Source of the DNA: Octopus bimaculoides
Lineage: Eukaryota
Length of the DNA: 64,000 bases
Reading direction: 5' to 3'
Assembly: GCF_001194135.2 (NCBI RefSeq)
Contig: NC_068991.1
Coordinates: 24,564,209 to 24,628,208 of the forward strand
The notes under the pieces were generated by a model that worked only from the letters and a program-made list of their open reading frames with translations, was not told the origin of the DNA and searched no databases. Positions within the stretch are counted from its first letter, which is position 1; every line of letters starts with the position of its first letter. This document shows positions 1-62,990 of the stretch, in pieces. Both the position numbers and the translations under genes were made by a program.

Positions 1-724
1 TATAAAATTTAGATTAAAAATTGAATGTGGCACCAGAATAAAGTATGGTATTATCCAAATAATTTCAAAAACAAGGTGATCAAAAATCAAAAAAAGCAAC
101 ACGGGTTTTAAGGGTTATTGCAGTACGCACATTTCATGCTACTCCATTTATTTAAGTAATGCTAGCATTACATTAAAATGCAGAGCAATCTTCAGCTGCA
201 CAAGGATATAGAAAATTTACTGAAAATTTTATTTCAGCAGAATAGACATATTACTGTTGTGACAACATTTAAAATCTAAGTGGGGAAAGAAGAATACATA
301 AAAAAGCCATCTTGACATAGCCAAGGCTAGTAATTAATTCTAGGTAGAATTCTAACTGTCCCTGATTTTATTTGTTTCTTATCTAGTGATTTAAAGCTTA
401 AGGGGACAATCAACCTTTCACTTATAAAGAAAGGGAAGGTGTAAGCATTATACATGGATATGGTTGTAAAGATTCCTCTGGTCATAGTGGCAACACAATT
501 TTAGGTTGGGGTTAAGCATCTAGGTCAACAGGACTTTTTTCTTTAGTCTAAGCTAATATAGATATCTATAAGTTTTCATACTTACAAGTAGACACAGGTA
601 TCAAGGGTTCAAATGACAATTTCTGCCTGTGCTACAGATCTTTTTAATTCATCTTCACTAATTTTATCAAGCAACAACAACAACAAAATATAACAATAAG
701 TTTGATGAGCAGAAAAAAACTTAC

Positions 725-837
725 TTGTCTTCCAGAATCATAGTGACTCGATTAGCACATTTGTAGTTGTCAAAAAGATGTCGGTAGTGGATGGCCACAC
801 CTAAATCGCAGTCCCTACCCAAAGATAAGGTCGCCGT
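725..837 (-). CDS. Celsr: Celsr/flamingo coding exon (113 bp, phase 0 to 2): laminin-G domain 1, continued (not in the ORF track)
   Basis: Manual translation gives TATLSLGRDCDLGVAIHYRHLFDNYKCANRVTMILED(K). This resembles the fly-type segment xxTLxLDxCD...WxCANRTTLxLDKRC. Acceptor is ctttcag and donor is GTAAGT. It is in frame with the 3676-3880 exon. Confidence 0.9.
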
Positions 838-1261
838 CTGAAAGAAATAGTAAAATTAAAACACACATTGTTTATCTTGTCTTGATATTTTGTGTTTTAC
901 AATTATTATTTCATGATAAAAGAAACGGTAAAAAAAAGTCTTCCAAATGGATATAAAGTAACCTTTTCAGCCATGGATTTTTAATATATTATTCTGAAGT
1001 GAGAGTAGCCTTGTGGATTCATGATTGCAAAATTATGGATTCAATTCCAGGGTGGTGCATTGTGCTTGAACAAAATACTACATTGCTCTGCAATCACTTC
1101 AACATCTGATGTATGCCACACCATGCACTTGTACTGGCAATGTTGATTTAATTTGATCACAACAAACAAATCATCTGTGCAGGTTGTTCAACAAGAAATT
1201 GCAGAATTGTCTGTCTCAGACTTGAGAGACTACCATTTAAATTAAATTAATTCTGCATGTA

Positions 1262-2230
1262 CCTATTTTAAAGTCATCTATAAATTCTGCATGCTGCATG
1301 AATCCTGAAGGAGCCCTTCAGCAATGATAGCAGTGAGAAATATTTGTTTTATCTATGGAAATGAGACTTTAAGTGACTGGACATACCAATGATGGTTTGA
1401 CCAGTTTCAACCAAGAAAATTTTCTCCTCGATCTGGAAGACCAAGTTCTGTCAATGTTGAATTTATGAAAACTGTAGTCTAAGAAAACCTCAATCGGACT
1501 GCATGAAAATTAACAGAACAGCTCAATTCAAGTCACACTTCAATCATAAAACATGTTCATGAACTAGGAAAAAATGTCTAAACTTGGTCAGTGGGTACAT
1601 CATCATTTGACTGCTTCACAGCATGATCAAAGAGTTGCCCTCTGCTTGTTATTGAAGAGTAGACTTGCTATCAAAACTTTTTTGGGTAGAATCATCACAA
1701 GTGATGAAAAGTGGGTTCTATGTATAATCATTTCCAACAAAAATGACAATGTTTAGCAATCAATGGAAAGGGGAATCCATCACCAAATCAGGACTACACC
1801 CCAAAAAGTTTCTTCTGCGTTTGTTGGGATGTGAAGGATGTTGTCTAACCATGAAGTGTTAAGCTAAAATGAAACACTTAATGGAGAGAAGTACCACCAT
1901 CAATTGGAAGTATTGCACAAAAATTTCAGAAAAAGGAGTCATCATTGGTCAATCATAAGGGTGTGTTGCTCTTACATGATAATGTAAGATCATATATTGA
2001 CCAAATCACTCAGGAACAGATTATGGCACTAAATATGGATATCTTTCCTCATTCACCTTACTCTCCTGATCTTGCTCCATCTATCAACTTTTCAGATCAT
2101 TGCAACATATTTAGAGGAAAAAAACAATCTATTAATTATGAGAATATTTAAAATTATATTGAGTGCTTCTTTGGTTTGACAACAATTTTATATCATAAGG
2201 ATCAATAATTTGCCAAAAAGATGAGATTAT
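1262..2230 (+). mobile_element. Decayed mariner (Tc1/mariner DD34D) transposase
   Basis: Fragments read GQWVHHHL (WVPHEL motif), RIITSDEKWVL (TGDEKW), LLLHDNVRSY (HDNARPH) and PHSPYSPDLAPS. An RSGRP-like segment lies near 1430. Stops and frameshifts occur throughout. Confidence 0.9.
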
Positions 2231-2261
2231 ATTATCAATGACAAGGGGAGATTTAGCTTTA

Positions 2262-3416
2262 TTCATTATCATCGTTTAATGTCTGCTTTCCATGGTGGCA
2301 TGGGTTGGACGGTTTGACTGAGGACTGGCAAGCCAGGAGGTGGGACCAGGTTCTAATCTGATCTGGCAAGGTTTCTACAGCTGGCTGTCCTTCTTAACAC
2401 CAACCACTTCGAGAGAATAGTGGGTGCTTTTTATGTGCCACTGGTATGGAGGCCAGTCAGGCAGCACTAGCATCAAACACACTCAAATGGTGCTTTTTAC
2501 ATACCACCAGCATAGGAACCAGTCAGCTGGCACTGGCATAGACCACACTTGAATGGTGCTTTTCACGTGCCACTGGCATGGGTGCCCATCAGCCACAACT
2601 ACGATTTCGCTTGACTAAATAGGTCTTCTCAAGCACAGTATATTGCCCAATGACTGAAGGGTACTTTGAAACGGGCCAATTATGCAACACTGGCATCGTC
2701 CACAGCTACAATCTCACTTGACTTGCTGGGTCCTCTCAATCACAGCATATCTCCGAAGGCCTCAGTCTTTTGTCATTGCTTCTGTGAGGCCCAACATTCG
2801 AAGGTCATGCTTCACCACCTCATCCCATGTCTCCCTGGGTTGACCTCTTCCACAGATTCCTTCCACTGTTCGAGTGTGACACATCTTCACACAGCTCTCC
2901 TCATCCATATGCAACACATGACCATACTAGCACAGTCATCTCTCTTATACACCACATCTGATGCTTCTTATGTCCAACTTTTCTCTCAGGGTGCTTACAC
3001 TTTGTCGTATATGCAAACTGACATTACACTTCCAGCGAAGCATTTCTTTCAAGCCTACTCATGTCCTCAGCAGTCACAGCCCACGTTTCACTGCCGTGTA
3101 GCATGGCTATTCGCATACATGCATCATACAGTCAATCTTTCACTCTGAGCAAGAGGCCCTTTGTTACCAGCAGAGGTAGGAGCTCCCTGAACTTTGCTCA
3201 GGCTATTCTTATTCTAGCAGCTATGCTCTCAGAGCATCCCCCACCACTATTGATTTGGTTACCGAGGTAACAGAAGTTATCAACTACTTTTAGCTTTTCC
3301 CCCTGGCATGTGATGGAATCTGTTTTCTGTACATCTTCAGTGTTATTGCCCCTGTGCTTCTGCCAAAGAAACATTTGTTTCTTTCCCATCTTGAAATGCA
3401 ACAGGACTTTCTTTCC
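2262..3416 (-). mobile_element. RTE-clade LINE, 3' portion (RT C-terminus plus 3'UTR with GAT-repeat tail), ending at the assembly gap
   Basis: Minus-strand translation includes VVDNFCYLG...GGGCSESIAARIRIAWAKFRELLPLL...AMLHGSETWAVT, typical of the RTE RT C-terminus. The 3' end matches the catcatcgtttaa...catgggttggacg motif shared by many copies in the window. Confidence 0.88.
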
Positions 3417-3531
3417 NNNNNNNNNNNNNNNNNNNNNNNNNNNNNNNNNNNNNNNNNNNNNNNNNNNNNNNNNNNNNNNNNNNNNNNNNNNNNNNNNNNN
3501 NNNNNNNNNNNNNNNNNNNNNNNNNNNNNNN
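3417..3531. other. Assembly gap (N run); further gaps at 34730-35090, 39725-40073 and 55739-56096
   Basis: Runs of n in the sequence. ORFs that span them are artefacts. Confidence 1.
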
Positions 3532-3675
3532 ATATATATATATATATAAATAAAACACACACAATCATATATATTCAGAGCCAAATTGTGCTTGTGTAAA
3601 TGCATGTAGTACACACACACACACACACACACTGAAAGAGAAGCATGAGTGACAAACACTAGCAATAATACTGAC

Positions 3676-3880
3676 CCTATTGTGGTACTCCACAGTCACT
3701 TCATGCCATTTGCCATCACTTACACCACCATCAATTTCTGCCTTCACGGATGTTTTGTTAGCACCAAGAGAGAAGGAAAACTGCACTTGGCTATTTACTA
3801 TCTCCAGAGCAATGAAATCATGCTCGTCATTGAATCGGCTGTTGTAGAAGAGTAAACCATTCTTTTCCAAAGTGGTGAAA
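3676..3880 (-). CDS. Celsr: Celsr/flamingo coding exon (205 bp, phase 2 to 0): laminin-G domain 1 core
   Basis: Translates (N)FTTLEKNGLLFYNSRFNDEHDFIALEIVNSQVQFSFSLGANKTSVKAEIDGGVSDGKWHEVTVEYHNR, matching Celsr FATxxxNGLLLYNGRFNEKHDFIALE...VSDGxWHxVxVxYxN. Acceptor is tttcag and donor is GTCAGT. Confidence 0.97.
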
Positions 3881-4164
3881 CTGAAATGAAACAAAAATGG
3901 TTTACATATAAAAATAAATATACATGTTTGTTTTTTGTAGTGCAAAAATATAAAACTACTCAATACAACTTTGTAGTAAGAAGTGTTTAGAGTCTGTTAT
4001 ATATATATATATAAATTCAATAATAGGATGAATTCTTTTACAAGAATTTATTTAGTAGCTAGCGTGAAAAAAACCTCATAAGGGAAAAAAACCTCATAAG
4101 GGAAAAAAACCCAACATTTATTCCCAAAATATATATTTATTTATATAAGGGCATTACTATACAA

Positions 4165-4272
4165 TAATGCCTCACGCTATGAGGGACTCTAAGGTCAGAC
4201 TACCATAAAAAATGGTAAAAATGTGTTTTTTATGGTAGTCTGACCTTAGAGTCACTCATAGCGAGAGGCATT

Positions 4273-4273
<1 letters not shown>
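4165..4273. repeat. Near-perfect palindrome: 48-bp arms, 2 mismatches, 13-nt loop
   Basis: taatgcctcacgctatgagggactctaaggtcagactaccataaaaaa (4165-4212) is the reverse complement of 4226-4273. Confidence 0.95.
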
Positions 4274-4304
<31 letters not shown>

Positions 4305-6573
4305 TATATATATATACACACACACACATTGCGGTGTACATAAACAAATGATTCTCTAAACAAACAAATTGAATAACAAATGGTTTTTTCCCAAAAGAAA
4401 ATTAAAGTCACATTACAAGCTGTAATTCAATCAATGAATTGCAAGCAGACTATGAGCATGTAGAAGTGATAAGGAACTCATTTGCTTAATGAGGTGAAAT
4501 TTGAGCAACAAAACCACAAAAAGACTCCGCAGGTGTATAAGTGCTGGGACAACATATACACACAGCATGAGTAAACTATGCATGCATATAAGTGATTGGG
4601 ATTTTGTGTACCAATGGTTTATTAGCAACCATGTATGCATTTCATTCGTGTAACTTTCAAATTTTCAAAAAAGAAGAGATAGTTATGATCGAAAGGCCTT
4701 CGGCCATAGGTCTGCTCAATAAGGGTTGACAAGGGGCTAAACAACAACAGCCCATATATCCCTAAAAGCAAATGAATAAATAGATAAATAAAATCACTGG
4801 TGTTTTGTTTTCTTATGAAATATATTGCTGTTGTTTAGTCTCAGGTCATATGATCAAAAGAATTCCAACCATAGCCATCATGTCTTTATCCTATGTGCAA
4901 GGAACCCAAAATCACATTATCCAATATGTCATTTTTAAAAAATATGGTCAGGTACAATTTGAGGGAGAACTGGCTGCTGCTTCCAGCAGATGGAGTGATC
5001 CGGTAGAGGTCCCTTTCTCATTGATTTAATAAATATATGGTGGAAGTTTATAACATGAATTTAAGGTGACTACTCACTTTATCATCCCTACACATATTCT
5101 TAATTTACGACAGCCAAATTTCAGAGTTATCTCCCCCCCTCTCTCTCCCACTCTCTATCTCAAACACACACACACACACATACTTCCACAGTCATCCACT
5201 GGTCAATAAAAATGTATGCCTGTATCAATAGATGATGTTTTTAATACTTGGAGATGTTTGTGAAGAGGAAGTTGCTTCCGTTGGTGAGTGAACAGTTCAT
5301 AGCAACACTGACTGGCAAGAAACGTCTCATATTATCGATTGGTCTCTAGATTGATTTTGAGACACAGACCACACACACACATACACATGCACATACACAC
5401 ACAAACAAAACAAATATGGGAGTGTTGTCATTGGAAACAATGGACAGTAATAATTAGGCTTTACTACAGGGAGCAGAAAGAAAAAAGAATTGTTTGAAAA
5501 ATATTAGCTTCAAGTATTGATGCAAATGATTAAGGAATGTACAGTAGAATGTCTCCCGGTACTGTTGTTGTTGTTATTGTTGTTTGTAATGTTTTTGTAA
5601 GCATGTTTTCTGTTATTGTTACACACTGATGCTTGTTTTATAAAGGTTTTACTGTTGTTTTATTATTGGTGTAGTAGTAAAATATTAGAGAGAATATTAG
5701 TTTGTAAAGGCAAATAGCTTTTCAGTGTATCAATACCATTGGGTAGTGATAGAGGCATTGGTGAAAAGAGGAAATGTTGATGTTATTGTTGTGAATGTTT
5801 ACAATTGTATTTGTCATAACTGATTATAGTTCTTGATGCAAATGATGACAAGTAAATGATGGTAGTTCAGAGCTGATCATGTAGATAAAATATATCCCAA
5901 CCATAAGCTCCTTTATTTATAACAAACTCTCTCTCTCTCTCTTGCTTTTTTTTTTTTTTTTTTTTTTGTAAATGCTTGAATCTAGAAAATCCTGAGATAT
6001 GATCAACAAAGTTAATCCCTAAGGGATTGTGAACTTGCAAATTTATTTATAAATCATCATCTGCAACCACCAAATTCTTGGAATACAGATGGCTCTTCCA
6101 AGGTGTCTGGGGATTTTTAACTGTCAGTTAGGACCTTCTATCTTTACTGATATCACAGACAATGCAAGTGGTTTCCCATGGCCTGTGCGCACACGTGTGT
6201 GCGTGTGTGCAAGCAAGAGAAAGAAGAATGGCAGAGATGACCTCAGCAAGATTTCAACTTAGCATGCAGAGAGCTGGAATAACTATAATGGCTACTGTAT
6301 TAAAAGGTTGTAAAGGTTTACTGAACTGTTAGCTCTGCAAGCAAAAATGGACTTCTGCCTCTATACAAATGTCATCTAGTGTATATAAAATCTGTGGTGT
6401 ATGGCAGTGAAATATGGGGATATAAGCAAAGAAGAACTAAAATGGCTAAAAAAAATGAACTGAATAAGATTCTTTAGATATACAATATTGATTTAAGAGA
6501 AAGATTGATCATATGTGAGTAGAGAAAGCTACTAGGATTCAGCTATGTATTGGAGAAAGCACTGGTATGGAGA

Positions 6574-6574
6574 G

Positions 6575-6619
<45 letters not shown>

Positions 6620-6830
6620 GTTTAATGTCCACTTTCCATGCTAGCATGGGTTGGACGATTTGACTGAGGACTGGTGAAACCAGATGGCTACACCAGGCTC
6701 CAATCTGATTTGGCAGAGTTTCTACAGCTGGATGCCCTTCCTAACACCAACCACTCAGAGAGTGTAGTAGGTGCTTTTACGTGTCACCCGCACGAAGGCC
6801 AGTCAGGCGGTACTGGCAACGGCCACGTGA
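6574..6830 (-). mobile_element. 5'-truncated RTE 3' end with long (CAT)n tail, inserted into an older plus-strand RTE remnant (about 6300-6570)
   Basis: The (cat)n-cgtttaatgtccactttccatgctagcatgggttggacg... sequence is shared with the copies at 2262, 26571, 34421, 43770 and 62220. The upstream flank translates to an SVVYGSEIWG-like RTE motif. Confidence 0.8.
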
Positions 6831-6968
6831 AATGATGGTACAAGCTAGGCATGTAAAATGTAAGCTGATAGTATAATAAGGAGATTAAAAAACATTTGGA
6901 ATGAAGTCAGAATTGATAGAAAATGAACAAACATATTGTAAACCCGTGCCAGCATAGAAAATGGATAT

Positions 6969-7191
6969 TTAACTCTTTAGCATTCAGATTACTCTGTCAA
7001 ATGTAATGCTTATGTAATAAAATTGTTTTGAATTAATCATGCATTATCTCATAGCTTTGAGATTTTGAAGATGTGACTGTTTTTAGGATGACATTGTAGA
7101 TAGTTGTGAAATGCTCAGTTAGGTCAGTTTGAACAATAAAACAGGTAGAATGTTTTGGTCAGATATGGCTGGTTTAAATGCTAAAGGGTAA
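6969..7191. mobile_element. TTAA-flanked MITE (piggyBac-like ends); an inverted copy lies at 21615-21842
   Basis: The ends ttaactctttagcatt and aatgctaaagggtaaa form terminal inverted repeats. The internal cagattactctgtcaaatgtaatgct is found reverse-complemented at about 21800-21830. Confidence 0.7.
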
Positions 7192-9669
7192 ACAAAAAAC
7201 AAATGATGACAATAATAATATTTTCTATTAAAATTTTGGGTGATGGGGGCTAATCTATTACATTGCGCCCCCCCCCCAGTGCTTAACTGTTACTTACTGA
7301 ATTTCTTGACCCCAAAAGGATGAAAGACAAAGTCGACTTCGGCAAAATCTGAACTCAGAACGTGCAGACAGACAAAATACCACTAAGCATTTTACCCAGT
7401 GTGCTAATTATTCTGCCAGCTTGCCACCTTAAATAATGACAATAATAATAATGGCATTTGGATAGGTGGGTTTATCTTTACTAAGTACAACAAAGCTGGA
7501 TCAAGATATGTTAAAAAAAAGAAAAGACAATGAAAATGTACTATATTTACTTGACTCTATGATTGTGAAGTTAAGGCAACTGTAACATTTTGTACCTAAA
7601 AACCATTGGTATGTTTTATTCTCTTGTCTTTTTTCTACAATCAAGTATAATGCTAACTACCCCCCCCTCCACTTCAGTCTTTGAATCTGATTTCTTTAAT
7701 ATTAAATTTCTCATGTTATATGAGTAAATACAATAATATACAATAATTGCTATTGTTGCTGACATTGAGGCCCTGGATAGACCTGACTGAGTGGACCTAT
7801 AATCAAAAGCACTATAACTATGACCATGCTATCCTTTTTCCCATTGGCTCAGTCCTCTGGCTTGGCAGCCCTTATCAAACCATCACACCCATGCCAGCAT
7901 GGAAAACACATATTAAATTATGATGATATTAAATTTCTTATGTCATATGAGTAAATACAATAATATAGTTTAATATAATATAATTTAATATAATATAATA
8001 TAATATAATAATATAATTTATCTAAGACTAAATTATCTATGTATTATTTTTTTTTCAAAGACAATAGGGCATGATTTTTAAGGAGATTTAATTGTTATTT
8101 CTAGCAGTTTGAGCAACCTTGTAGAAATTACATTATTGACTCAATAACTTCCCTATCCAGGAGCCTACTGGCTTGATAGAACCCCCACCCTCATTGATTC
8201 ATTAGTCATGCTTTCATTGGTGACATCATAGCTCAATAACAAGAGTGTTCATAAAGATCATCATAGTTTCCCTTTTTATGTTTTCATAATATCAGCTCTT
8301 TTAAAATATTAATTTCACACAATATTAAGTTTCAGAAACAATATATTTTAAAAGATTTCAGTCTTTCAAAAGAATTTAAAGGATGTGTGATTAAGGAGCT
8401 GTACTGTTTACTGCCAAGTCTTAGGTTCACAACTTGCTATAACTTTTGGTTGTGTACTTAGAGCTAAAACACTTTGCTCCACAATAGATGGTGGATTTAA
8501 TTATGGTGTTAGATTATTAACTGATAAATCTTGAGTTCGAATCTACTGTATATCTTTCATTGTGTATTCAGATACTATGCTTAATTCTATATACACTCTG
8601 TTTATCTGTTTTTGAAAGACACATATAGCCCTGCATGTCACAGGAGGTAATACAAAGAGTTAGCAACAAGAAGAGCATCTGGTCATAAAATACTGCCTTG
8701 AAAAAGGAGTATGATTAGAAGTGTCCTCAAGGCCAACCAGACTTTAGTAGGTGAAAGGGCCTAAAAATATTTGTTGATTTTTGTATTTAATTGGACATAT
8801 CTGTGCCCACCGAGTTGTACCAGATCATTCGTCACCCACTGTAGAACATTGGGGGATTTATTTGTCATTTATTTAATTAACCACAGCTAACCACTGGCCC
8901 TTTTAAGACCTCTCAGGATTTAACAAACATGCAATGTTTTCTTTTTCTTTTATTGTTTTTCTTTACCTTAATCTTCTCAGATCAGTCTCTTAAGCTAAAC
9001 AGTCATTAGAGTATCAGTCAAAATGCTTTGTGTTCTAAGCCAAATCCCATCATGGTCAACTTTACCTTTCATCTTTCTTGGTATAATAAATAGAAGTATC
9101 ACTCTAGGGTGACAGACTAGCAGAATCATTAAAGCATTATTGAGAAGCTTTTGTTTTTTGTATTCTGAGTTCAAATTCTACTGGAATCAGTTTGGTTGGT
9201 AGACTTAATTCCTTGCCCAGTTTAATATCATGACCTCGTCTTTGGATAACTTTAGCAGGGCCACTCAAATTGTAAGTATTTAGATCAAGTCTCTAGTTTA
9301 AGTATATCCACTCTCTCCCTCCCATCCAGTCTCAAAGACTTTGAAAAGATATCAGGAGTACTATCATTTTTTTCTACCTGAAAAAAGAAAGAAACCAAGA
9401 GTAAAAATAATAAAATAAATAAATAAATGAAACAGAATCTAGGGAGAAACATTTGCTCTTTGTTTCTTCTCATACAACTGGATAGGCCCAAAATATCACA
9501 TTGCTCTATTCCACATTGCAAACAAATTTATCTTAATTAATGAGATTCCAGTGCCTTCAGTTTAAAAACCAAATATGCTTCATCTTGTGGACATCATTTG
9601 TAACTTCTTAATAGTAAATTTCATCAAATTAAACTGATGGCTCATTTTATCTTCAAGGCACTGCCTTGA

Positions 9670-32949: not shown

Positions 32950-33130
32950 ATATATATATACATATATATGACGGGCTTCTTTCAGTTTCCGTCTACTAAA
33001 TCCACTCATAAGGCTTTGGTCGGCCCGAGGCTATAGAAGACACTTGCCCAAGATGCCACGCAGTAGGACTGAACCCGGAACCATGTGGTTGGTAAGCAAG
33101 CTACTTACCACACATCCACTCCTGTGCCTA
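32700..33130 (-). mobile_element. Young full-length copy of the abundant tRNA-derived SINE
   Basis: CpG-rich and colinear with 33851-34247 over its whole length. Confidence 0.92.
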
Positions 33131-34072: not shown

Positions 34073-34247
34073 CATATATATACGATGGGCTTCTTTCAGT
34101 TTCTGTCTACCAAATCCACTCACAAGGCTTTGGTTGGCCCAAGGCTATAGTAGAAAACACTTGCCCAAGGTGCCACGCAGTGGGACTGAACCCGGAACCA
34201 TGTGGTTGGTAAGCAAGCTACTTACGACACAGACACTCCTGCGCCTA
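33851..34247 (-). mobile_element. Young full-length copy of the abundant tRNA-derived SINE; further partial copies at about 25870-26010, 35262-35570, 38510-38660, 52862-53045, 53620-53765 and 59020-59190
   Basis: High identity to 32700-33130, with A-box and B-box-like head at the right end. Confidence 0.92.
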
Positions 34248-34420: not shown

Positions 34421-35250
34421 ATCATCATCATCATCATCGTTTAACGTCCGTTTTCCATGCTAGCATGGGTTGGACGATTTGACTGAGGACTGGTGAAACC
34501 GGATGGCAACACCAGGCTCCAATCTAATTTGGCAGAGTTTCCACAGTTGGATGCTCTTCCTAACGCCAACCACTCAGAGAGTGTAGTGGGTGCTTTTACG
34601 TGTCACCCGCACGAAAACGGCCATGCTCGAAATGGTGTCTTTTATGTGCCACCCGCACAAGAGCCAGTCCAGGGGCACTGGCAACAATCTTGCTCGAAAA
34701 CCCTACAAGGCCAGTCAGGCGGTACTGGCNNNNNNNNNNNNNNNNNNNNNNNNNNNNNNNNNNNNNNNNNNNNNNNNNNNNNNNNNNNNNNNNNNNNNNN
34801 NNNNNNNNNNNNNNNNNNNNNNNNNNNNNNNNNNNNNNNNNNNNNNNNNNNNNNNNNNNNNNNNNNNNNNNNNNNNNNNNNNNNNNNNNNNNNNNNNNNN
34901 NNNNNNNNNNNNNNNNNNNNNNNNNNNNNNNNNNNNNNNNNNNNNNNNNNNNNNNNNNNNNNNNNNNNNNNNNNNNNNNNNNNNNNNNNNNNNNNNNNNN
35001 NNNNNNNNNNNNNNNNNNNNNNNNNNNNNNNNNNNNNNNNNNNNNNNNNNNNNNNNNNNNNNNNNNNNNNNNNNNNNNNNNNNNNNNNNNATTACACATC
35101 CAGCGGAGCATACTGGCTTCATTCCTTGCGAGCTTATGCATGTCCTCAGCAGTCACAGCCCATGTTTCACTGCCATGTAGCATGGCTGTTCGTACACATG
35201 CGTCATACAGTCTGCCTTTTACTCTGAGTGAGAGTCCCTTTGTTGCCAGC
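34421..35250 (-). mobile_element. RTE-clade LINE 3' fragment spanning an assembly gap
   Basis: Minus-strand translation gives PLLATKGLSLRVKGRLYDACVRTAMLHGSETWAVTAEDMHKLARNEASMLRWMCN. The 3'UTR and (CAT)n tail are at 34421-34729. Confidence 0.9.
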
Positions 35251-38241: not shown

Positions 38242-38722
38242 AGATAAATAGGTAGATAGATACACATAAATTATGTATTTTACACACACACACACATACA
38301 GCTGATAGAAATTAAATGCCTCACAACTCAAGTTTCATACCACCACCACAAACTTAAGCTGAGATTACAGTGAGACACAAAACTTGAGCTACAAGGTAAC
38401 TATTCAATTTCAATTAATTCTAAAGTTTACAACATACAACGAGCACTTCTCTCCCAATTGTCCATCAAAATTCCACATTTGTACATACACAACGCTTGCA
38501 CACACATATGACTGGCTTCTTTTAGTATTTGTTTACCAAATCTACTCACAAGGCCTTGATCAGCCCAGGGCTATAGTAGAAGTATTGGTGCATGATGACA
38601 TGCAGAAGGACCAGACCCAAAACCACGTGATCAAGAAGCAAACTTCTTAAACGCACACTGTGTCTTTTGCTACATGCCTCTGTGTGTATCTGTTTGTCTG
38701 CATATATATGTATGTATATGTG

Positions 38723-38759
<37 letters not shown>

Positions 38760-41798: not shown

Positions 41799-42033
41799 TT
41801 CAGCTGAACCTTGAAATGATTCCGTTGCTTTATTGATGGGAAAGTCAGATAAGATCCTTTGAAGAAGCGGCGAGTAGTCAATTCACAGAATTTGTTATGA
41901 TAATCCATACCAGAGCATCCTTTACAATAGAAGCCACCAACTTCAAGAGGTTCACATACAGAAGGGGGTTTACATATATTCTTTGGACAATTCTTTCCAA
42001 AATTTTGAAACAGATCCATTTCACAATTTTTGC
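41799..42033 (-). CDS. Celsr: Celsr/flamingo coding exon (235 bp, phase 1 to 2): EGF-like repeat and start of laminin-G domain 1
   Basis: Translates (G)KNCEMDLFQNFGKNCPKNICKPPSVCEPLEVGGFYCKGCSGMDYHNKFCELTTRRFFKGSYLTFPSIKQRNHFKVQL, matching Celsr CExTTRSF...SFxTFxxLRQRFHF. Acceptor is ccag and donor is GTGAGT. Phases fit both neighbouring exons. Confidence 0.95.
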
Positions 42034-43769: not shown

Positions 43770-44396
43770 TCATCATCATCATCATCATCATCATCATTTA
43801 AGGTCCGCATTCCATGCTGGCATGGGTTGGACGGTTTGACTGATGGCTGATGCCAGATGGCTGCACCAGGCTCCAATCTGATCTGGCAGAGTTTCTATAG
43901 CTGGATGCCCTTCCTAATGCCAACCACTCTGGGAGTGTAGTGGGTGCTTTTACGTGCTACCGGCACGAGGGCCAGTTGGGTGGTACTGGCAACGGCCATG
44001 CTCAAAAGGTGTTTCTATGTGTCACCTGCACAGGAACCAGTCCAGCGGCACTAGCAACATCCTCACTTGAATGTTGTTTTCCACGTACCACCGGCACAAG
44101 TGCCAGTAAGGCGACGCTGGTAATGATCACGTTCAAACGGTGCTTTTTACGTGCCACCAGCACAGGGGCCAGTCAGCGGCCCTGTCAACGATCACGCTCG
44201 GATGGTGCTCTTAGTGCTCCACTAGCATGGATACCAGTCATGCGGTGCTGTCATTGAATTTGATTTCGATTTCACTTGCCTCAACAGGTCTTCACAAGCA
44301 GAGTTTAGTGTCCGATGAAAGAAAGGTATGCCTAAGTGGGCTGGTTACACCACTGGCATAGGCCACAAGTTATGGTCTCACTTAGCTTGCCGGGTC

Positions 44397-47959: not shown

Positions 47960-48210
47960 GGTGTCACATAAAAAGCACCCACATTAGTGCCACATAAAAA
48001 GCACCTGTGCTAGTTCCACATTAAAAGCATCAAGTACACTCTGTAAAGTGGTTGGTGTTAGGAAGGAATCTGGCCATAGAAAGCTTGCTATAACAGACAA
48101 TTGGGGCCTGGTGCAGCTCTCCAGCTGACCAGCTCCTGTCAAACCAACCAACTCATGCCAGCATGGAAAATGGATATTAAATAATAATGATAATGATGAT
48201 GATGATGCCT
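47960..48210 (+). mobile_element. RTE-type 3' end, plus orientation, with (GAT)n tail; related remnant at 7810-7930
   Basis: ctcctgtcaaaccaaccaactcatgccagcatggaaaatggatattaaat...gatgatg is the reverse complement of the (cat)n-headed copies. Confidence 0.7.
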
Positions 48211-52493: not shown

Positions 52494-52619
52494 CTGTATA
52501 TCCTTCTGGACATAAGCAGACATAACCTCCTTCTTTTGGAATGCATGTTCCATTCTGTTGACAAGGTGTTGAGTAACAGAAATTTACTTCAACATCACAG
52601 AGTAAATCAACTGTCATTC
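52494..52619 (-). CDS. Celsr: Celsr/flamingo coding exon (126 bp, phase 1 to 1): EGF-like repeat
   Basis: Translates (G)MTVDLLCDVEVNFCYSTPCQQNGTCIPKEGGYVCLCPEGYT(G), matching Celsr CDTEVDLCYSxPCxNGGxCxxREGGYTCxC. Acceptor is ttacag and donor is GTCAGT. The frame continues from the previous exon. Confidence 0.96.
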
Positions 52620-53863: not shown

Positions 53864-54038
53864 CTGTAAAACCCTTTGGACACCGGCACTGGTATCCATT
53901 GTTAGAGTGAATTGGTCGAAAAAGCATTGAATCAGACTTGATGAACGGTGCAGCACTTCCACTAAGGAGACGTGTCATACACACTTCAAAGTTAATACAT
54001 GGTTCCATCACACACAAGTTGTCATCAAATGACATCAC
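53864..54038 (-). CDS. Celsr: Celsr/flamingo coding exon (175 bp, phase 0 to 1): end of post-cadherin linker and first EGF-like repeat
   Basis: Translates VMSFDDNLCVMEPCINFEVCMTRLLSGSAAPFIKSDSMLFRPIHSNNGYQCRCPKGFT(G). This matches the Celsr/stan pattern xxPFDDNxCxREPCxNxxxC...FIxSxxxLFRPI...CRCPxGFTG, recalled from family knowledge. Acceptor is tttcag and donor is GTAAAA. Confidence 0.96.
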
Positions 54039-62219: not shown

Positions 62220-62990
62220 ATCATTATCATCATTTAACATCTGCCTTCCATGCTGGCATGGGTAGGACGGTTTGACAAGAGCCAGCCAGGCAGAAGCCTG
62301 ACCCAGACTTCTATAACTGTTTTGGCAGGGTTTTTACAGGTGGATGCCCTTCCTAACACCAACCACTCAGCAGAGTGGACTTAGTGCTTTTTTATGTGGC
62401 ACAAGCACAGGTAAGGTCAGTTTTGGCAAGGTTTTTACAGCTGGATGCCCTTCCAAACACCAACCACTTTACATTGTGGACCGGGTACTTTTAAGTGGCA
62501 CCTGCACTGTCAGGGTCATCAAGTACTTGCAAGGAAAAAAAAACCTCTTTTGAGAAGGGAGGGGGCATTGGCGGAAGTGATCTTGTGTCAGATGATAAAA
62601 GGTTATAGTGAGGCAGAGAGATAGAAACAGGTGTCTTGCTATAGAGGAGGTACAATGTTACCCGGCCGGAGAGAGAGAGAGAGAGAGATCAGGAATGAAG
62701 AGAGAAACAGATGTGCTGCTGCAAAGGAAATACATGGTTACCCAAACTGAGGGAAGTGCAGCAGAAGGAGAGAGAGAGAAGGAGACAGCAGGATAGAGAT
62801 GGTAGCAAAGTGCCAGGCATACACAATGACCCGGTGAAACAGGTCATGGGTGGAACATGCAGGTTAGAAGCTAGCAGATAGCAATGATACAGTGACACAG
62901 GGCCAAGATGACAGGATTGGGGAGTGGGAGGCAAGCCTAGTGCATGAAGTGGAAATGTGAGGAAGAGAAGAGATGTAGTTTGGTTTGTTG
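62220..62990 (-). mobile_element. RTE-tailed element: RTE-type 3' end (62220-62500) plus a body that is purine-rich on the plus strand; related degenerate copy at about 13020-13560
   Basis: Contains catcatttaacatctgccttccatgctggcatggg. Both loci share caag(t/c)acttg(c/t)aagg followed by a ggg..gggg..ga-rich tract. Confidence 0.55.

What the first reader, a model, noticed from the sequence alone, without database searches (positions are those of the whole stretch)
3838..3876. Two genomic A-for-G substitutions at conserved laminin-G residues: candidate restorative A-to-I editing sites in Celsr
Seen: the exon encodes F-T-T (ACC, A at 3876) and Y-N-S-R-F (AGC, A at 3840). Recalled family knowledge: human CELSR and Drosophila stan have F-A-T and Y-N-G-R-F/Y at these positions. 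A single A-to-I change at each first codon position gives GCC (Ala) and GGC (Gly), restoring the consensus. The Ser site has a 3' G neighbour, which ADARs favour. Established: coleoid cephalopods recode neural transcripts extensively by A-to-I editing. Inference: these may be recoding sites in a neural wiring and PCP receptor.
Basis: partly seen in the sequence, partly recalled or inferred. Interest (0 to 1): 0.7.

Follow-up and report, generated by a model that had tools for sequence, protein, structure and literature searches.

The report
Octopus Celsr exon: two unusual substitutions
The two codons are real, derived G-to-A changes at conserved positions of an octopod Celsr (Flamingo) laminin-G exon, but nothing available here shows that RNA editing reverses them, and the indirect evidence and published base rates make ordinary, tolerated substitutions the likelier explanation.

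Summary
On the minus strand, window 3880..3676 is an internal coding exon of a Celsr/Flamingo orthologue. Five exons in the window align colinearly with CELSR1. ACC (Thr) lies at 3876-3874 and AGC (Ser) at 3840-3838. The animal is an octopod: the Argonauta hians orthologue is 89% identical. Among about 115 representative Celsr sequences from cnidarians to vertebrates, the Ser position is Gly in 114 and Ala in 1. The Thr position is Ala in 83 of 95.

Editing itself could not be tested: no RNA reads and no other cephalopod copy of this exon were reachable. Indirect evidence is unfavourable:
- Both adenosines have a 5' C, which is depleted at squid editing sites.
- The exon folds no better than shuffled sequence, and no complementary partner lies within about 5 kb.
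- The same gene replaces two equally conserved prolines by Ser through C-to-T changes, which ADAR cannot repair.
- Published data show only 2.3-3.6% of such "potential restorative" sites are edited at all, mostly at low levels.

The best reading is ordinary GC-to-AT substitutions. I put detectable editing at either site at about 5%.

The parts
3676..3880 (-). Celsr exon D (205 nt): N-terminal half of laminin-G domain 1. It contains both flagged codons.
   Evidence: sequence, frame, AG/GT splice signals. CELSR1 8vy2_A 1232-1299, E 4e-25. Pfam Laminin_G_2, E 5e-17.
3874..3876 (-). ACC = Thr181 (exon position 2), where 83 of 95 orthologues have Ala. 5' neighbour C, 3' neighbour C.
   Evidence: Thr also occurs in Nematostella (P0121) and in one unnamed Logan animal (P0139).
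3838..3840 (-). AGC = Ser193 (exon position 14), where 114 of 115 orthologues have Gly. 5' neighbour C, 3' neighbour G.
   Evidence: All 21 named or long orthologues have Gly.
41799..42033 (-). Celsr exon C (235 nt): EGF-like domain plus the start of laminin-G 1. It ends in AA, which joins T3880 to make Asn179.
   Evidence: Identical in protein to Logan contigs L009-L011 and 85% identical to Argonauta.
52494..52619 (-). Celsr exon B (126 nt): EGF-like domain.
53864..54038 (-). Celsr exon A (175 nt): region after the last cadherin repeat and first EGF-like module.
725..837 (-). Celsr exon E (113 nt): continuation of laminin-G 1 (TATLSLGRDCDLGVAIHYRHLFDNYKCANRVTMILED).
   Evidence: tblastn with Lingula, Littorina, Patella and Biomphalaria proteins. 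(splice signals).

Best explanation
Window 3880..3676 (minus strand) is an ordinary, functional coding exon of the single Celsr/Flamingo gene of an octopod. It encodes the first half of laminin-G domain 1. The Thr (ACC) and Ser (AGC) codons are lineage-specific G-to-A transitions from ancestral GCN (Ala) and GGN (Gly). They belong to the general GC-to-AT drift of this AT-rich genome and are tolerated by the laminin-G fold. They are translated as written, without any need for RNA editing to restore the ancestral residue. What is shown: the gene identity, the codons, the conservation in other phyla, the derived state relative to gastropods and brachiopods, the purifying selection on the gene, and the matching C-to-T departures. 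What is inferred: that the two residues are tolerated, and that editing is absent or trivial.
For: Gene and frame: (247 aa colinear with CELSR1 1061-1299, E 1e-78). Octopod origin: Argonauta hians protein 89% identical; Logan contigs with an identical exon C protein and 88.5% nucleotide identity. Functional gene: dN/dS 0.034 against Argonauta over 176 codons. Derived state: Patella, Littorina, Biomphalaria, Lingula, Terebratalia and Saccoglossus all have F-A-T and Y-N-G-R. AT-rich genome: 34.5% G+C. Symmetric drift: of 6 departures from columns at least 90% conserved, 2 are A>G-restorable and 2 are T>C-restorable (Pro to Ser at aa 3 and aa 45); with four lophotrochozoans unanimous the counts are 2 against 3.3. 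Argonauta keeps Pro at aa 3 and aa 141, so those C-to-T changes are recent and cannot be repaired by ADAR. Tolerance: position 2 varies naturally (S, V, T, R), and in HMMER's alignment the same Y-N-S tripeptide lines up with Y-N-S in one neurexin-1alpha laminin-G domain, so Ser fits the fold there. Against editing: 5' C at both sites, where squid sites have 5' C in only 12% of cases; exon z-score +1.59, with 193 of 200 shuffles folding at least as well; spliced A-D z = 0.0; best duplex partners within about 5 kb are no better than for shuffled probes; no inverted-repeat arm overlaps the exon. Base rate: only 2.26% (O. bimaculoides) to 3.55% of potential restorative sites are edited, with median level below 2.5%.
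Against: The Gly is almost invariant from cnidarians to vertebrates (114 of 115). A Ser there is therefore unusual, and a constrained site is exactly where the harm-permitting model expects a G-to-A change to need high editing. Celsr is a neural gene, and editing incidence is about twofold higher in neural genes. A3840 has the favoured 3' G. No RNA data were examined, and downstream exons outside the window could supply a pairing partner in the mature mRNA. The state of these codons in other cephalopods is unknown.
Confidence: 0.8

Rival explanations
1. The reader's hypothesis of restorative (harm-permitting) A-to-I editing. ADAR deaminates A3840 and/or A3876 in neural transcripts, so that part of the protein carries the ancestral Gly and/or Ala, and this is what allowed the genomic G-to-A changes to be fixed.
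For: Both sites are nonsynonymous A positions whose change to G gives the residue found in gastropods, brachiopods and nearly all other animals. This matches the definition of a potential restorative site. The animal is a coleoid. The Gly is nearly invariant. A3840 has a 3' G, and 41% of squid sites have one. Restorative sites are edited more often and at higher levels than synonymous sites.
Against: Only 2.3-3.6% of potential restorative sites are edited at all, and about 90% of restorative sites in O. vulgaris are edited at 0-20%. Both sites have the disfavoured 5' C. No double-stranded context was found in the exon, the spliced A-D mRNA or the flanking 5 kb of pre-mRNA. The same gene shows as many C-to-T departures at conserved prolines, which no editing can restore. 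No Celsr entry appears in the held supplementary tables.
Confidence: 0.05
2. A functional rather than neutral substitution. Thr181, together with Asn179 (encoded across the exon C/D junction as AA|T), creates an N-F-T N-glycosylation sequon on this extracellular domain, and the Ala-to-Thr change was retained for that reason.
For: Asn at position 179 and the N-x-T motif are unique to the window among 22 aligned Celsr sequences; the others have S, T, R, K, Q or M before the Phe. Exon C ends in AA in the window, in Argonauta and in the Logan octopod. Another sequon in the same exon (N-K-T) sits where many orthologues have N-I-T or N-I-S.
Against: N-x-S/T motifs arise by chance often. No evidence of glycosylation exists. 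Exon D of other octopods was not seen, so the conservation of the sequon is unknown. This reading does not explain the Gly-to-Ser change.
Confidence: 0.1
3. The two adenosines are assembly or sequencing errors, or heterozygous variants of the sequenced individual, in a draft assembly.
For: The window is draft quality, with four runs of N including one 145 bases from the exon.
Against: The exon reads cleanly, with an intact frame and splice sites. Two independent errors that both fall at first codon positions of conserved residues are unlikely. Other recent substitutions of the same mutational class occur in exons A and C.
Confidence: 0.04

Closest known systems
CELSR1-3 / Flamingo (Starry night), the adhesion GPCR subfamily ADGRC
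   Same: Exons A-E align colinearly with CELSR1 (8vy2_A residues 1061-1299, E 1e-78) through the post-cadherin region, two EGF-like modules and laminin-G 1. Identity is 52-55% to gastropod and brachiopod Celsr over 284 aa, and the intron positions around exon D are shared with many animals.
   Different: Thr for Ala and Ser for the nearly invariant Gly in laminin-G 1. Two or three conserved prolines are replaced by Ser. There is a unique N-F-T sequon. The cadherin repeats and the HormR/GAIN/7TM parts lie outside the window.
Restorative (harm-permitting) A-to-I recoding sites of coleoids (Jiang and Zhang 2019, PMC6881472; Shoshan et al. 2021, PMC8382921)
   Same: A genomic A whose conversion to G gives the amino acid found in outgroups, in a gene of the nervous system of a coleoid.
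   Different: Editing is not shown here. The 5' neighbour is C at both sites and no duplex context was found. By the published numbers about 96-98% of such potential sites are not edited.
GRIA2 Q/R site, the classical restorative recoding site
   Same: The idea that the edited form is the functional, ancestral-like one.
   Different: The GRIA2 site is edited nearly completely and depends on a defined intronic complementary sequence. No such partner exists near this exon.

Membership tests
Laminin G domain (Pfam PF02210 / PF00054) | Match to the family profile above the curated cut-off | tested here: met
   Laminin_G_2 63 bits (cut-off 22.9) and Laminin_G_1 53.1 bits (cut-off 24) for the 68-aa exon.
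Celsr / Flamingo (ADGRC) | Colinear EGF - EGF - laminin-G arrangement that is most similar to Celsr rather than to neurexin, agrin or laminin | tested here: met
   CELSR1 E 1e-78 in a single stretch covering 1-247, against neurexin at 7e-29; 75.5 bits for the exon against 25 bits for the best neurexin domain; the nearest full-length relatives are named Celsr or stan.
Celsr / Flamingo (ADGRC) | Nine cadherin repeats at the N-terminus; HormR, GAIN and seven-transmembrane region at the C-terminus | not testable with these tools
   These parts lie outside the 64-kb window. tblastn with full-length orthologues found only exons A-E.
ADAR recoding site | A in genomic DNA and G in cDNA or RNA reads of the same animal | not testable with these tools
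   No RNA reads are available. The published editome tables are not held or hold no Celsr entry.
ADAR recoding site | The target adenosine lies in a double-stranded RNA region | tested here: not met
   Exon z = +1.59. Spliced A-D z = 0.0, with A3840 unpaired in the MFE structure. Best duplex partners within about 5 kb are -27.6 and -33.5 kcal/mol, against -30.8 +/- 3.0 and -29.3 +/- 2.3 for shuffled probes. No inverted-repeat arm overlaps the exon. Caveat: exons downstream of the window were not available.
ADAR recoding site | Neighbour preference: 5' not G or C, 3' G | tested here: inconclusive
   The 5' neighbour is C at both sites, and 12% of squid sites have 5' C. The 3' neighbour is G at A3840 (41% of squid sites) and C at A3876.
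Potential restorative site as defined by Jiang and Zhang 2019 | A-to-G is nonsynonymous and yields the amino acid of an ancestral node | tested here: inconclusive
   Met relative to gastropods, brachiopods and all other phyla sampled. The cephalopod ancestral nodes (Nautilus, decapodiforms, other octopods) could not be sampled for this exon.

The most novel reading that the evidence does not exclude
The Gly-to-Ser change at a residue that is otherwise invariant from cnidarians to vertebrates became fixed only because A3840 is edited at a high level in neurons, a true harm-permitting site in a planar-polarity and axon-guidance receptor. Editing at A3876 would additionally switch the octopus-specific N179-F-T181 glycosylation sequon off (N-F-A), giving edited and unedited Celsr isoforms that differ in a glycan.
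Probability: 0.03. Interest if true: 0.45.

Novelty: already known. Interest (0 to 1): 0.15.

Why it matters
If the sites were edited, they would be two more entries among several thousand restorative recoding sites already catalogued in coleoids. They would be of some interest because Celsr controls planar polarity and axon tract formation, and because the Gly is so deeply conserved. As it stands, the finding is an ordinary orthologous exon with lineage-specific substitutions. Its main use is as a worked example. "Genomic A where relatives have G" is a weak predictor of editing: the published hit rate is 2-4%. The mirror-image class, T where relatives have C, is a simple internal control for that kind of argument.

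Tried and rejected
1. Other cephalopod copies of exon D. Two word-index protein searches with the exon and with exons A-D found the Argonauta model, but it stops at exon C. The Argonauta locus with 10 kb of downstream flank does not reach exon D. A profile search and the whole-library HMMER search gave no hit above 71% identity. Two JGI metagenome scans gave 32 invertebrate Celsr exons, none of them cephalopod.
2. Published editing tables. Liscovitch-Brauer 2017 is not held under the PMC id I recalled. The squid supplement of Alon 2015 and the Jiang and Zhang source data contain no CELR, STAN or Celsr entry. No paper combines 'RNA editing', 'octopus' and 'CELSR'.
3. Naming the Logan and ENA samples through their accession numbers in papers gave no hit, so the species of the window and of L009-L011 remain unnamed.
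4. An intronic editing-complementary sequence: none was found. The strongly negative z-score of the pre-mRNA segment 4180..3560 probably reflects the (TA)n tracts and half of an intronic hairpin (repeats), though I did not test this by removing them. In that fold A3840 sits in a run of only six consecutive paired positions.
5. Pseudogene or paralogue: rejected, because the splice sites and frames are intact and dN/dS is 0.034.
6. Structure prediction was considered but not run. The window lacks the C-terminal third of the domain, and the tool reports no per-residue geometry.

Full report
**What is at the coordinates**

Read on the minus strand, window 3880..3676 is a 205-nt internal coding exon. 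It has an AG acceptor at 3882-3881 and a GT donor at 3675-3674. Its translation is FTTLEKNGLLFYNSRFNDEHDFIALEIVNSQVQFSFSLGANKTSVKAEIDGGVSDGKWHEVTVEYHNR. An A-to-G change at each first codon position would give GCC (Ala) and GGC (Gly).

**Gene identity**

The exon matches Pfam Laminin_G_2 (E 5e-17). Its best solved-structure relative is CELSR1 (8vy2_A residues 1232-1299, E 4e-25). That sequence reads F-A-T and Y-N-G-R-F at the two places.

I found four more exons of the same gene on the minus strand:
- Exon A: 54038..53864
- Exon B: 52619..52494
- Exon C: 42033..41799
- Exon E: 837..725

Spliced, exons A-D give 247 residues that align in one colinear stretch with CELSR1 1061-1299 (E 1e-78, against 7e-29 for neurexin). 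The intron between C and D is about 38 kb. The gene is therefore Celsr/Flamingo. The flagged exon encodes the first half of laminin-G domain 1.

**Which animal**

- A hypothetical protein of Argonauta hians, an octopod, is 89% identical over exons A-C.
- Logan contigs from three sequencing runs encode an identical exon C. They are 88.5% identical in DNA over 689 bases that include intron.
- Gastropod and brachiopod Celsr proteins are 52-55% identical.

G+C content is 34.5%. dN/dS against Argonauta over 176 codons is 0.034, so the gene is under strong purifying selection and is not a pseudogene.

**Conservation of the two residues**

A HMMER search of 1.84 billion representative proteins returned well over a hundred Celsr laminin-G 1 sequences. 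Among 116 with at least 47% identity:
- The Ser position is Gly in 114 and Ala in 1.
- The Thr position is Ala in 83, Ser in 6, Val in 3, Thr in 2 and Arg in 1.

The named members span:
- Nematostella
- Insects, a tick and a centipede
- Ciona and amphioxus
- Hagfish, fishes and a frog
- Saccoglossus and a crinoid
- Two brachiopods
- Three gastropods (Patella, Littorina, Biomphalaria)

All the molluscs and brachiopods have F-A-T and Y-N-G-R. At DNA level, 24 of 24 independent genomic exons carry GGN. At the other position, 20 carry GCN and 3 carry TCN. The octopod states are derived, and each is one G-to-A transition away from the ancestral codon. Thr at the first position is also the genomic state in Nematostella. 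Ser at the Gly position was seen nowhere else.

**Is the pattern more than chance?**

I aligned the 284 codons of exons A-E with 21 non-redundant full-length orthologues. I then listed every column conserved in at least 90% of them where the window differs. There are six such departures:

| Single-base change that restores the consensus | Count | Sites |
|---|---|---|
| T>C | 2 | Pro to Ser at aa 3 (TCA, 54032) and aa 45 (TCT, 53906) |
| A>C or A>T | 1 | |
| More than one change needed | 1 | |

With four lophotrochozoans unanimous, the counts are 2 for A>G against 3.3 for T>C. Argonauta still has Pro at aa 3 and aa 141, so some of these C-to-T changes are recent.

C-to-T on the coding strand is the strand mirror of G-to-A. 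ADAR cannot reverse it. The gene thus departs from deeply conserved residues as often by the uneditable route as by the editable one. This is what plain GC-to-AT drift in an AT-rich genome predicts. The pair of A-for-G sites carries no statistical signal of its own.

**Indirect tests of editing**

ADAR needs a duplex.
- Exon D alone folds less well than its dinucleotide shuffles (z = +1.59; 193 of 200 shuffles fold at least as well).
- The spliced A-D mRNA has z = 0.0, and A3840 is unpaired in the minimum-energy structure.
- Probes of 51 nt centred on each site find no partner within window 1-9000 that beats shuffled probes. The best energies are -27.6 and -33.5 kcal/mol, against -30.8 +/- 3.0 and -29.3 +/- 2.3 for shuffles.
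- No inverted-repeat arm overlaps the exon.
- The only strong hairpin nearby has 84-nt arms at 4129-4309. It lies wholly in the upstream intron.

On neighbour preference, Alon et al. 2015 report that only 12% of squid sites have a 5' C and that 41% have a 3' G (PMC4384741). Both candidate sites have a 5' C, and one has a 3' G. One caveat applies: exons downstream of the window could pair with this exon in the mature mRNA, and they were not available.

**Base rate**

Their source data give the fraction of potential restorative sites that are actually edited:

| Species | Restorative sites edited |
|---|---|
| O. bimaculoides | 2.26% |
| O. vulgaris | 3.44% |
| Squid | 2.6% |
| Cuttlefish | 3.55% |

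The figure for synonymous sites is 1.4-3.1%. Median restorative levels are below 2.5%. About 90% of restorative sites in O. vulgaris are edited at 0-20%. Shoshan et al. 2021 confirm the enrichment. They add that editing incidence is about twofold higher in neural genes (PMC8382921).

I weighed the following together:
- In favour: a neural gene, the 3' G at one site, and the strong constraint on the Gly.
- Against: the 5' C at both sites and the absence of predicted structure.

This gives about 5% for detectable editing at either site. It gives below 1% for editing high enough to restore function.

**Best explanation and rivals**

- **Ordinary substitutions (confidence 0.8).** The exon carries two tolerated G-to-A substitutions. 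Position 2 varies naturally. In HMMER's alignment of the exon to neurexin-1alpha, Y-N-S lines up with Y-N-S, so Ser at the turn after the GLLFY strand is compatible with the fold.
- **Restorative editing (0.05).**
- **Functional substitution (0.1, not exclusive).** Thr181, together with Asn179 encoded across the C/D splice junction, forms an N-F-T glycosylation sequon. That sequon is unique among 22 aligned Celsr proteins.
- **Assembly error or polymorphism (0.04).**

**What could not be done**

No RNA reads, no held editome table with Celsr, and no second cephalopod copy of exon D were reachable. The decisive experiments are:
- RNA and DNA read mapping at 3840 and 3876.
- A look-up in the published octopus editomes.
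- An alignment of this exon from Nautilus, decapodiforms and other octopods.

**Verdict**

The editing inference is untested and unlikely on present evidence. The feature is an ordinary exon of a known gene, and the mechanism proposed belongs to a known, already catalogued class. Interest is low.

Noticed in passing
window 41800-41799 plus 3880, and 3879-3874 (minus strand): Asn179 is encoded across the exon C/D junction (AA|T). With Phe180 and Thr181 it forms an N-F-T N-glycosylation sequon. No other of 22 aligned Celsr sequences has Asn here. Editing of A3876 would abolish the sequon.
   Followed up: partly
window 54032-54030 (TCA), 53906-53904 (TCT), 41914-41912 (TCT), minus strand: Three Ser codons stand where orthologues have conserved Pro (two positions at 19-20 of 21 orthologues, the third unanimous in four lophotrochozoans). 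Each is one C-to-T change from CCN. Argonauta keeps Pro at the first and third.
   Followed up: yes
window 3864-3862 (AAG Lys), 3795-3793 (AAT Asn), 3792-3790 (AGC Ser), minus strand: Three further codons in the same exon would give the commonest orthologue residue (Arg, Asp, Gly) after A-to-G. These positions are variable, however, and Biomphalaria also has E-I-V-N-S-Q, so Asn-Ser may be ancestral in molluscs.
   Followed up: partly
window 4129-4309: An inverted repeat with 84-nt arms, 85% complementary, 13 nt apart, lies in the intron about 250 nt upstream of exon D. It is single copy in the window and flanked by (TA)n. It would form a long hairpin in the pre-mRNA and could itself be an ADAR substrate.
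   Followed up: partly
window 2265-2317, 6611-6663, 7875-7927, 34430-34492, 43787-43863, 48130-48192, 62223-62305; also 32970-33078 and 34083-34195 against L008 33132-33244: Multiple diverged copies of short interspersed repeats lie in the introns, in both orientations. One family is shared with the Argonauta locus at 83-86% identity.
   Followed up: partly
window about 3024-3416, minus strand: Open reading frames just downstream of exon D (for example ...KLKVVDNFCYLGNQINSGGGCSESIAARIRIA and MRIAMLHGSETWAVTAEDMSRLERN...) look like the C-terminal part of a LINE reverse transcriptase. They are interrupted by the N run at 3417-3531.
   Followed up: no
L008 (Argonauta hians BAAFZT010000019.1) 38485-38724: The annotated Argonauta protein P0158 ends by reading through the exon C donor into the intron (...KIQMK, then stop). 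The Argonauta Celsr gene model is therefore truncated, and exon D lies more than 10 kb further on, unannotated.
   Followed up: partly
window 3881-41798: The intron between exons C and D is about 38 kb, and exons A-E span 53 kb for 285 codons. The Argonauta introns A-B and B-C are much shorter (0.5 and 1.8 kb, against 1.2 and 10.5 kb here).
   Followed up: no
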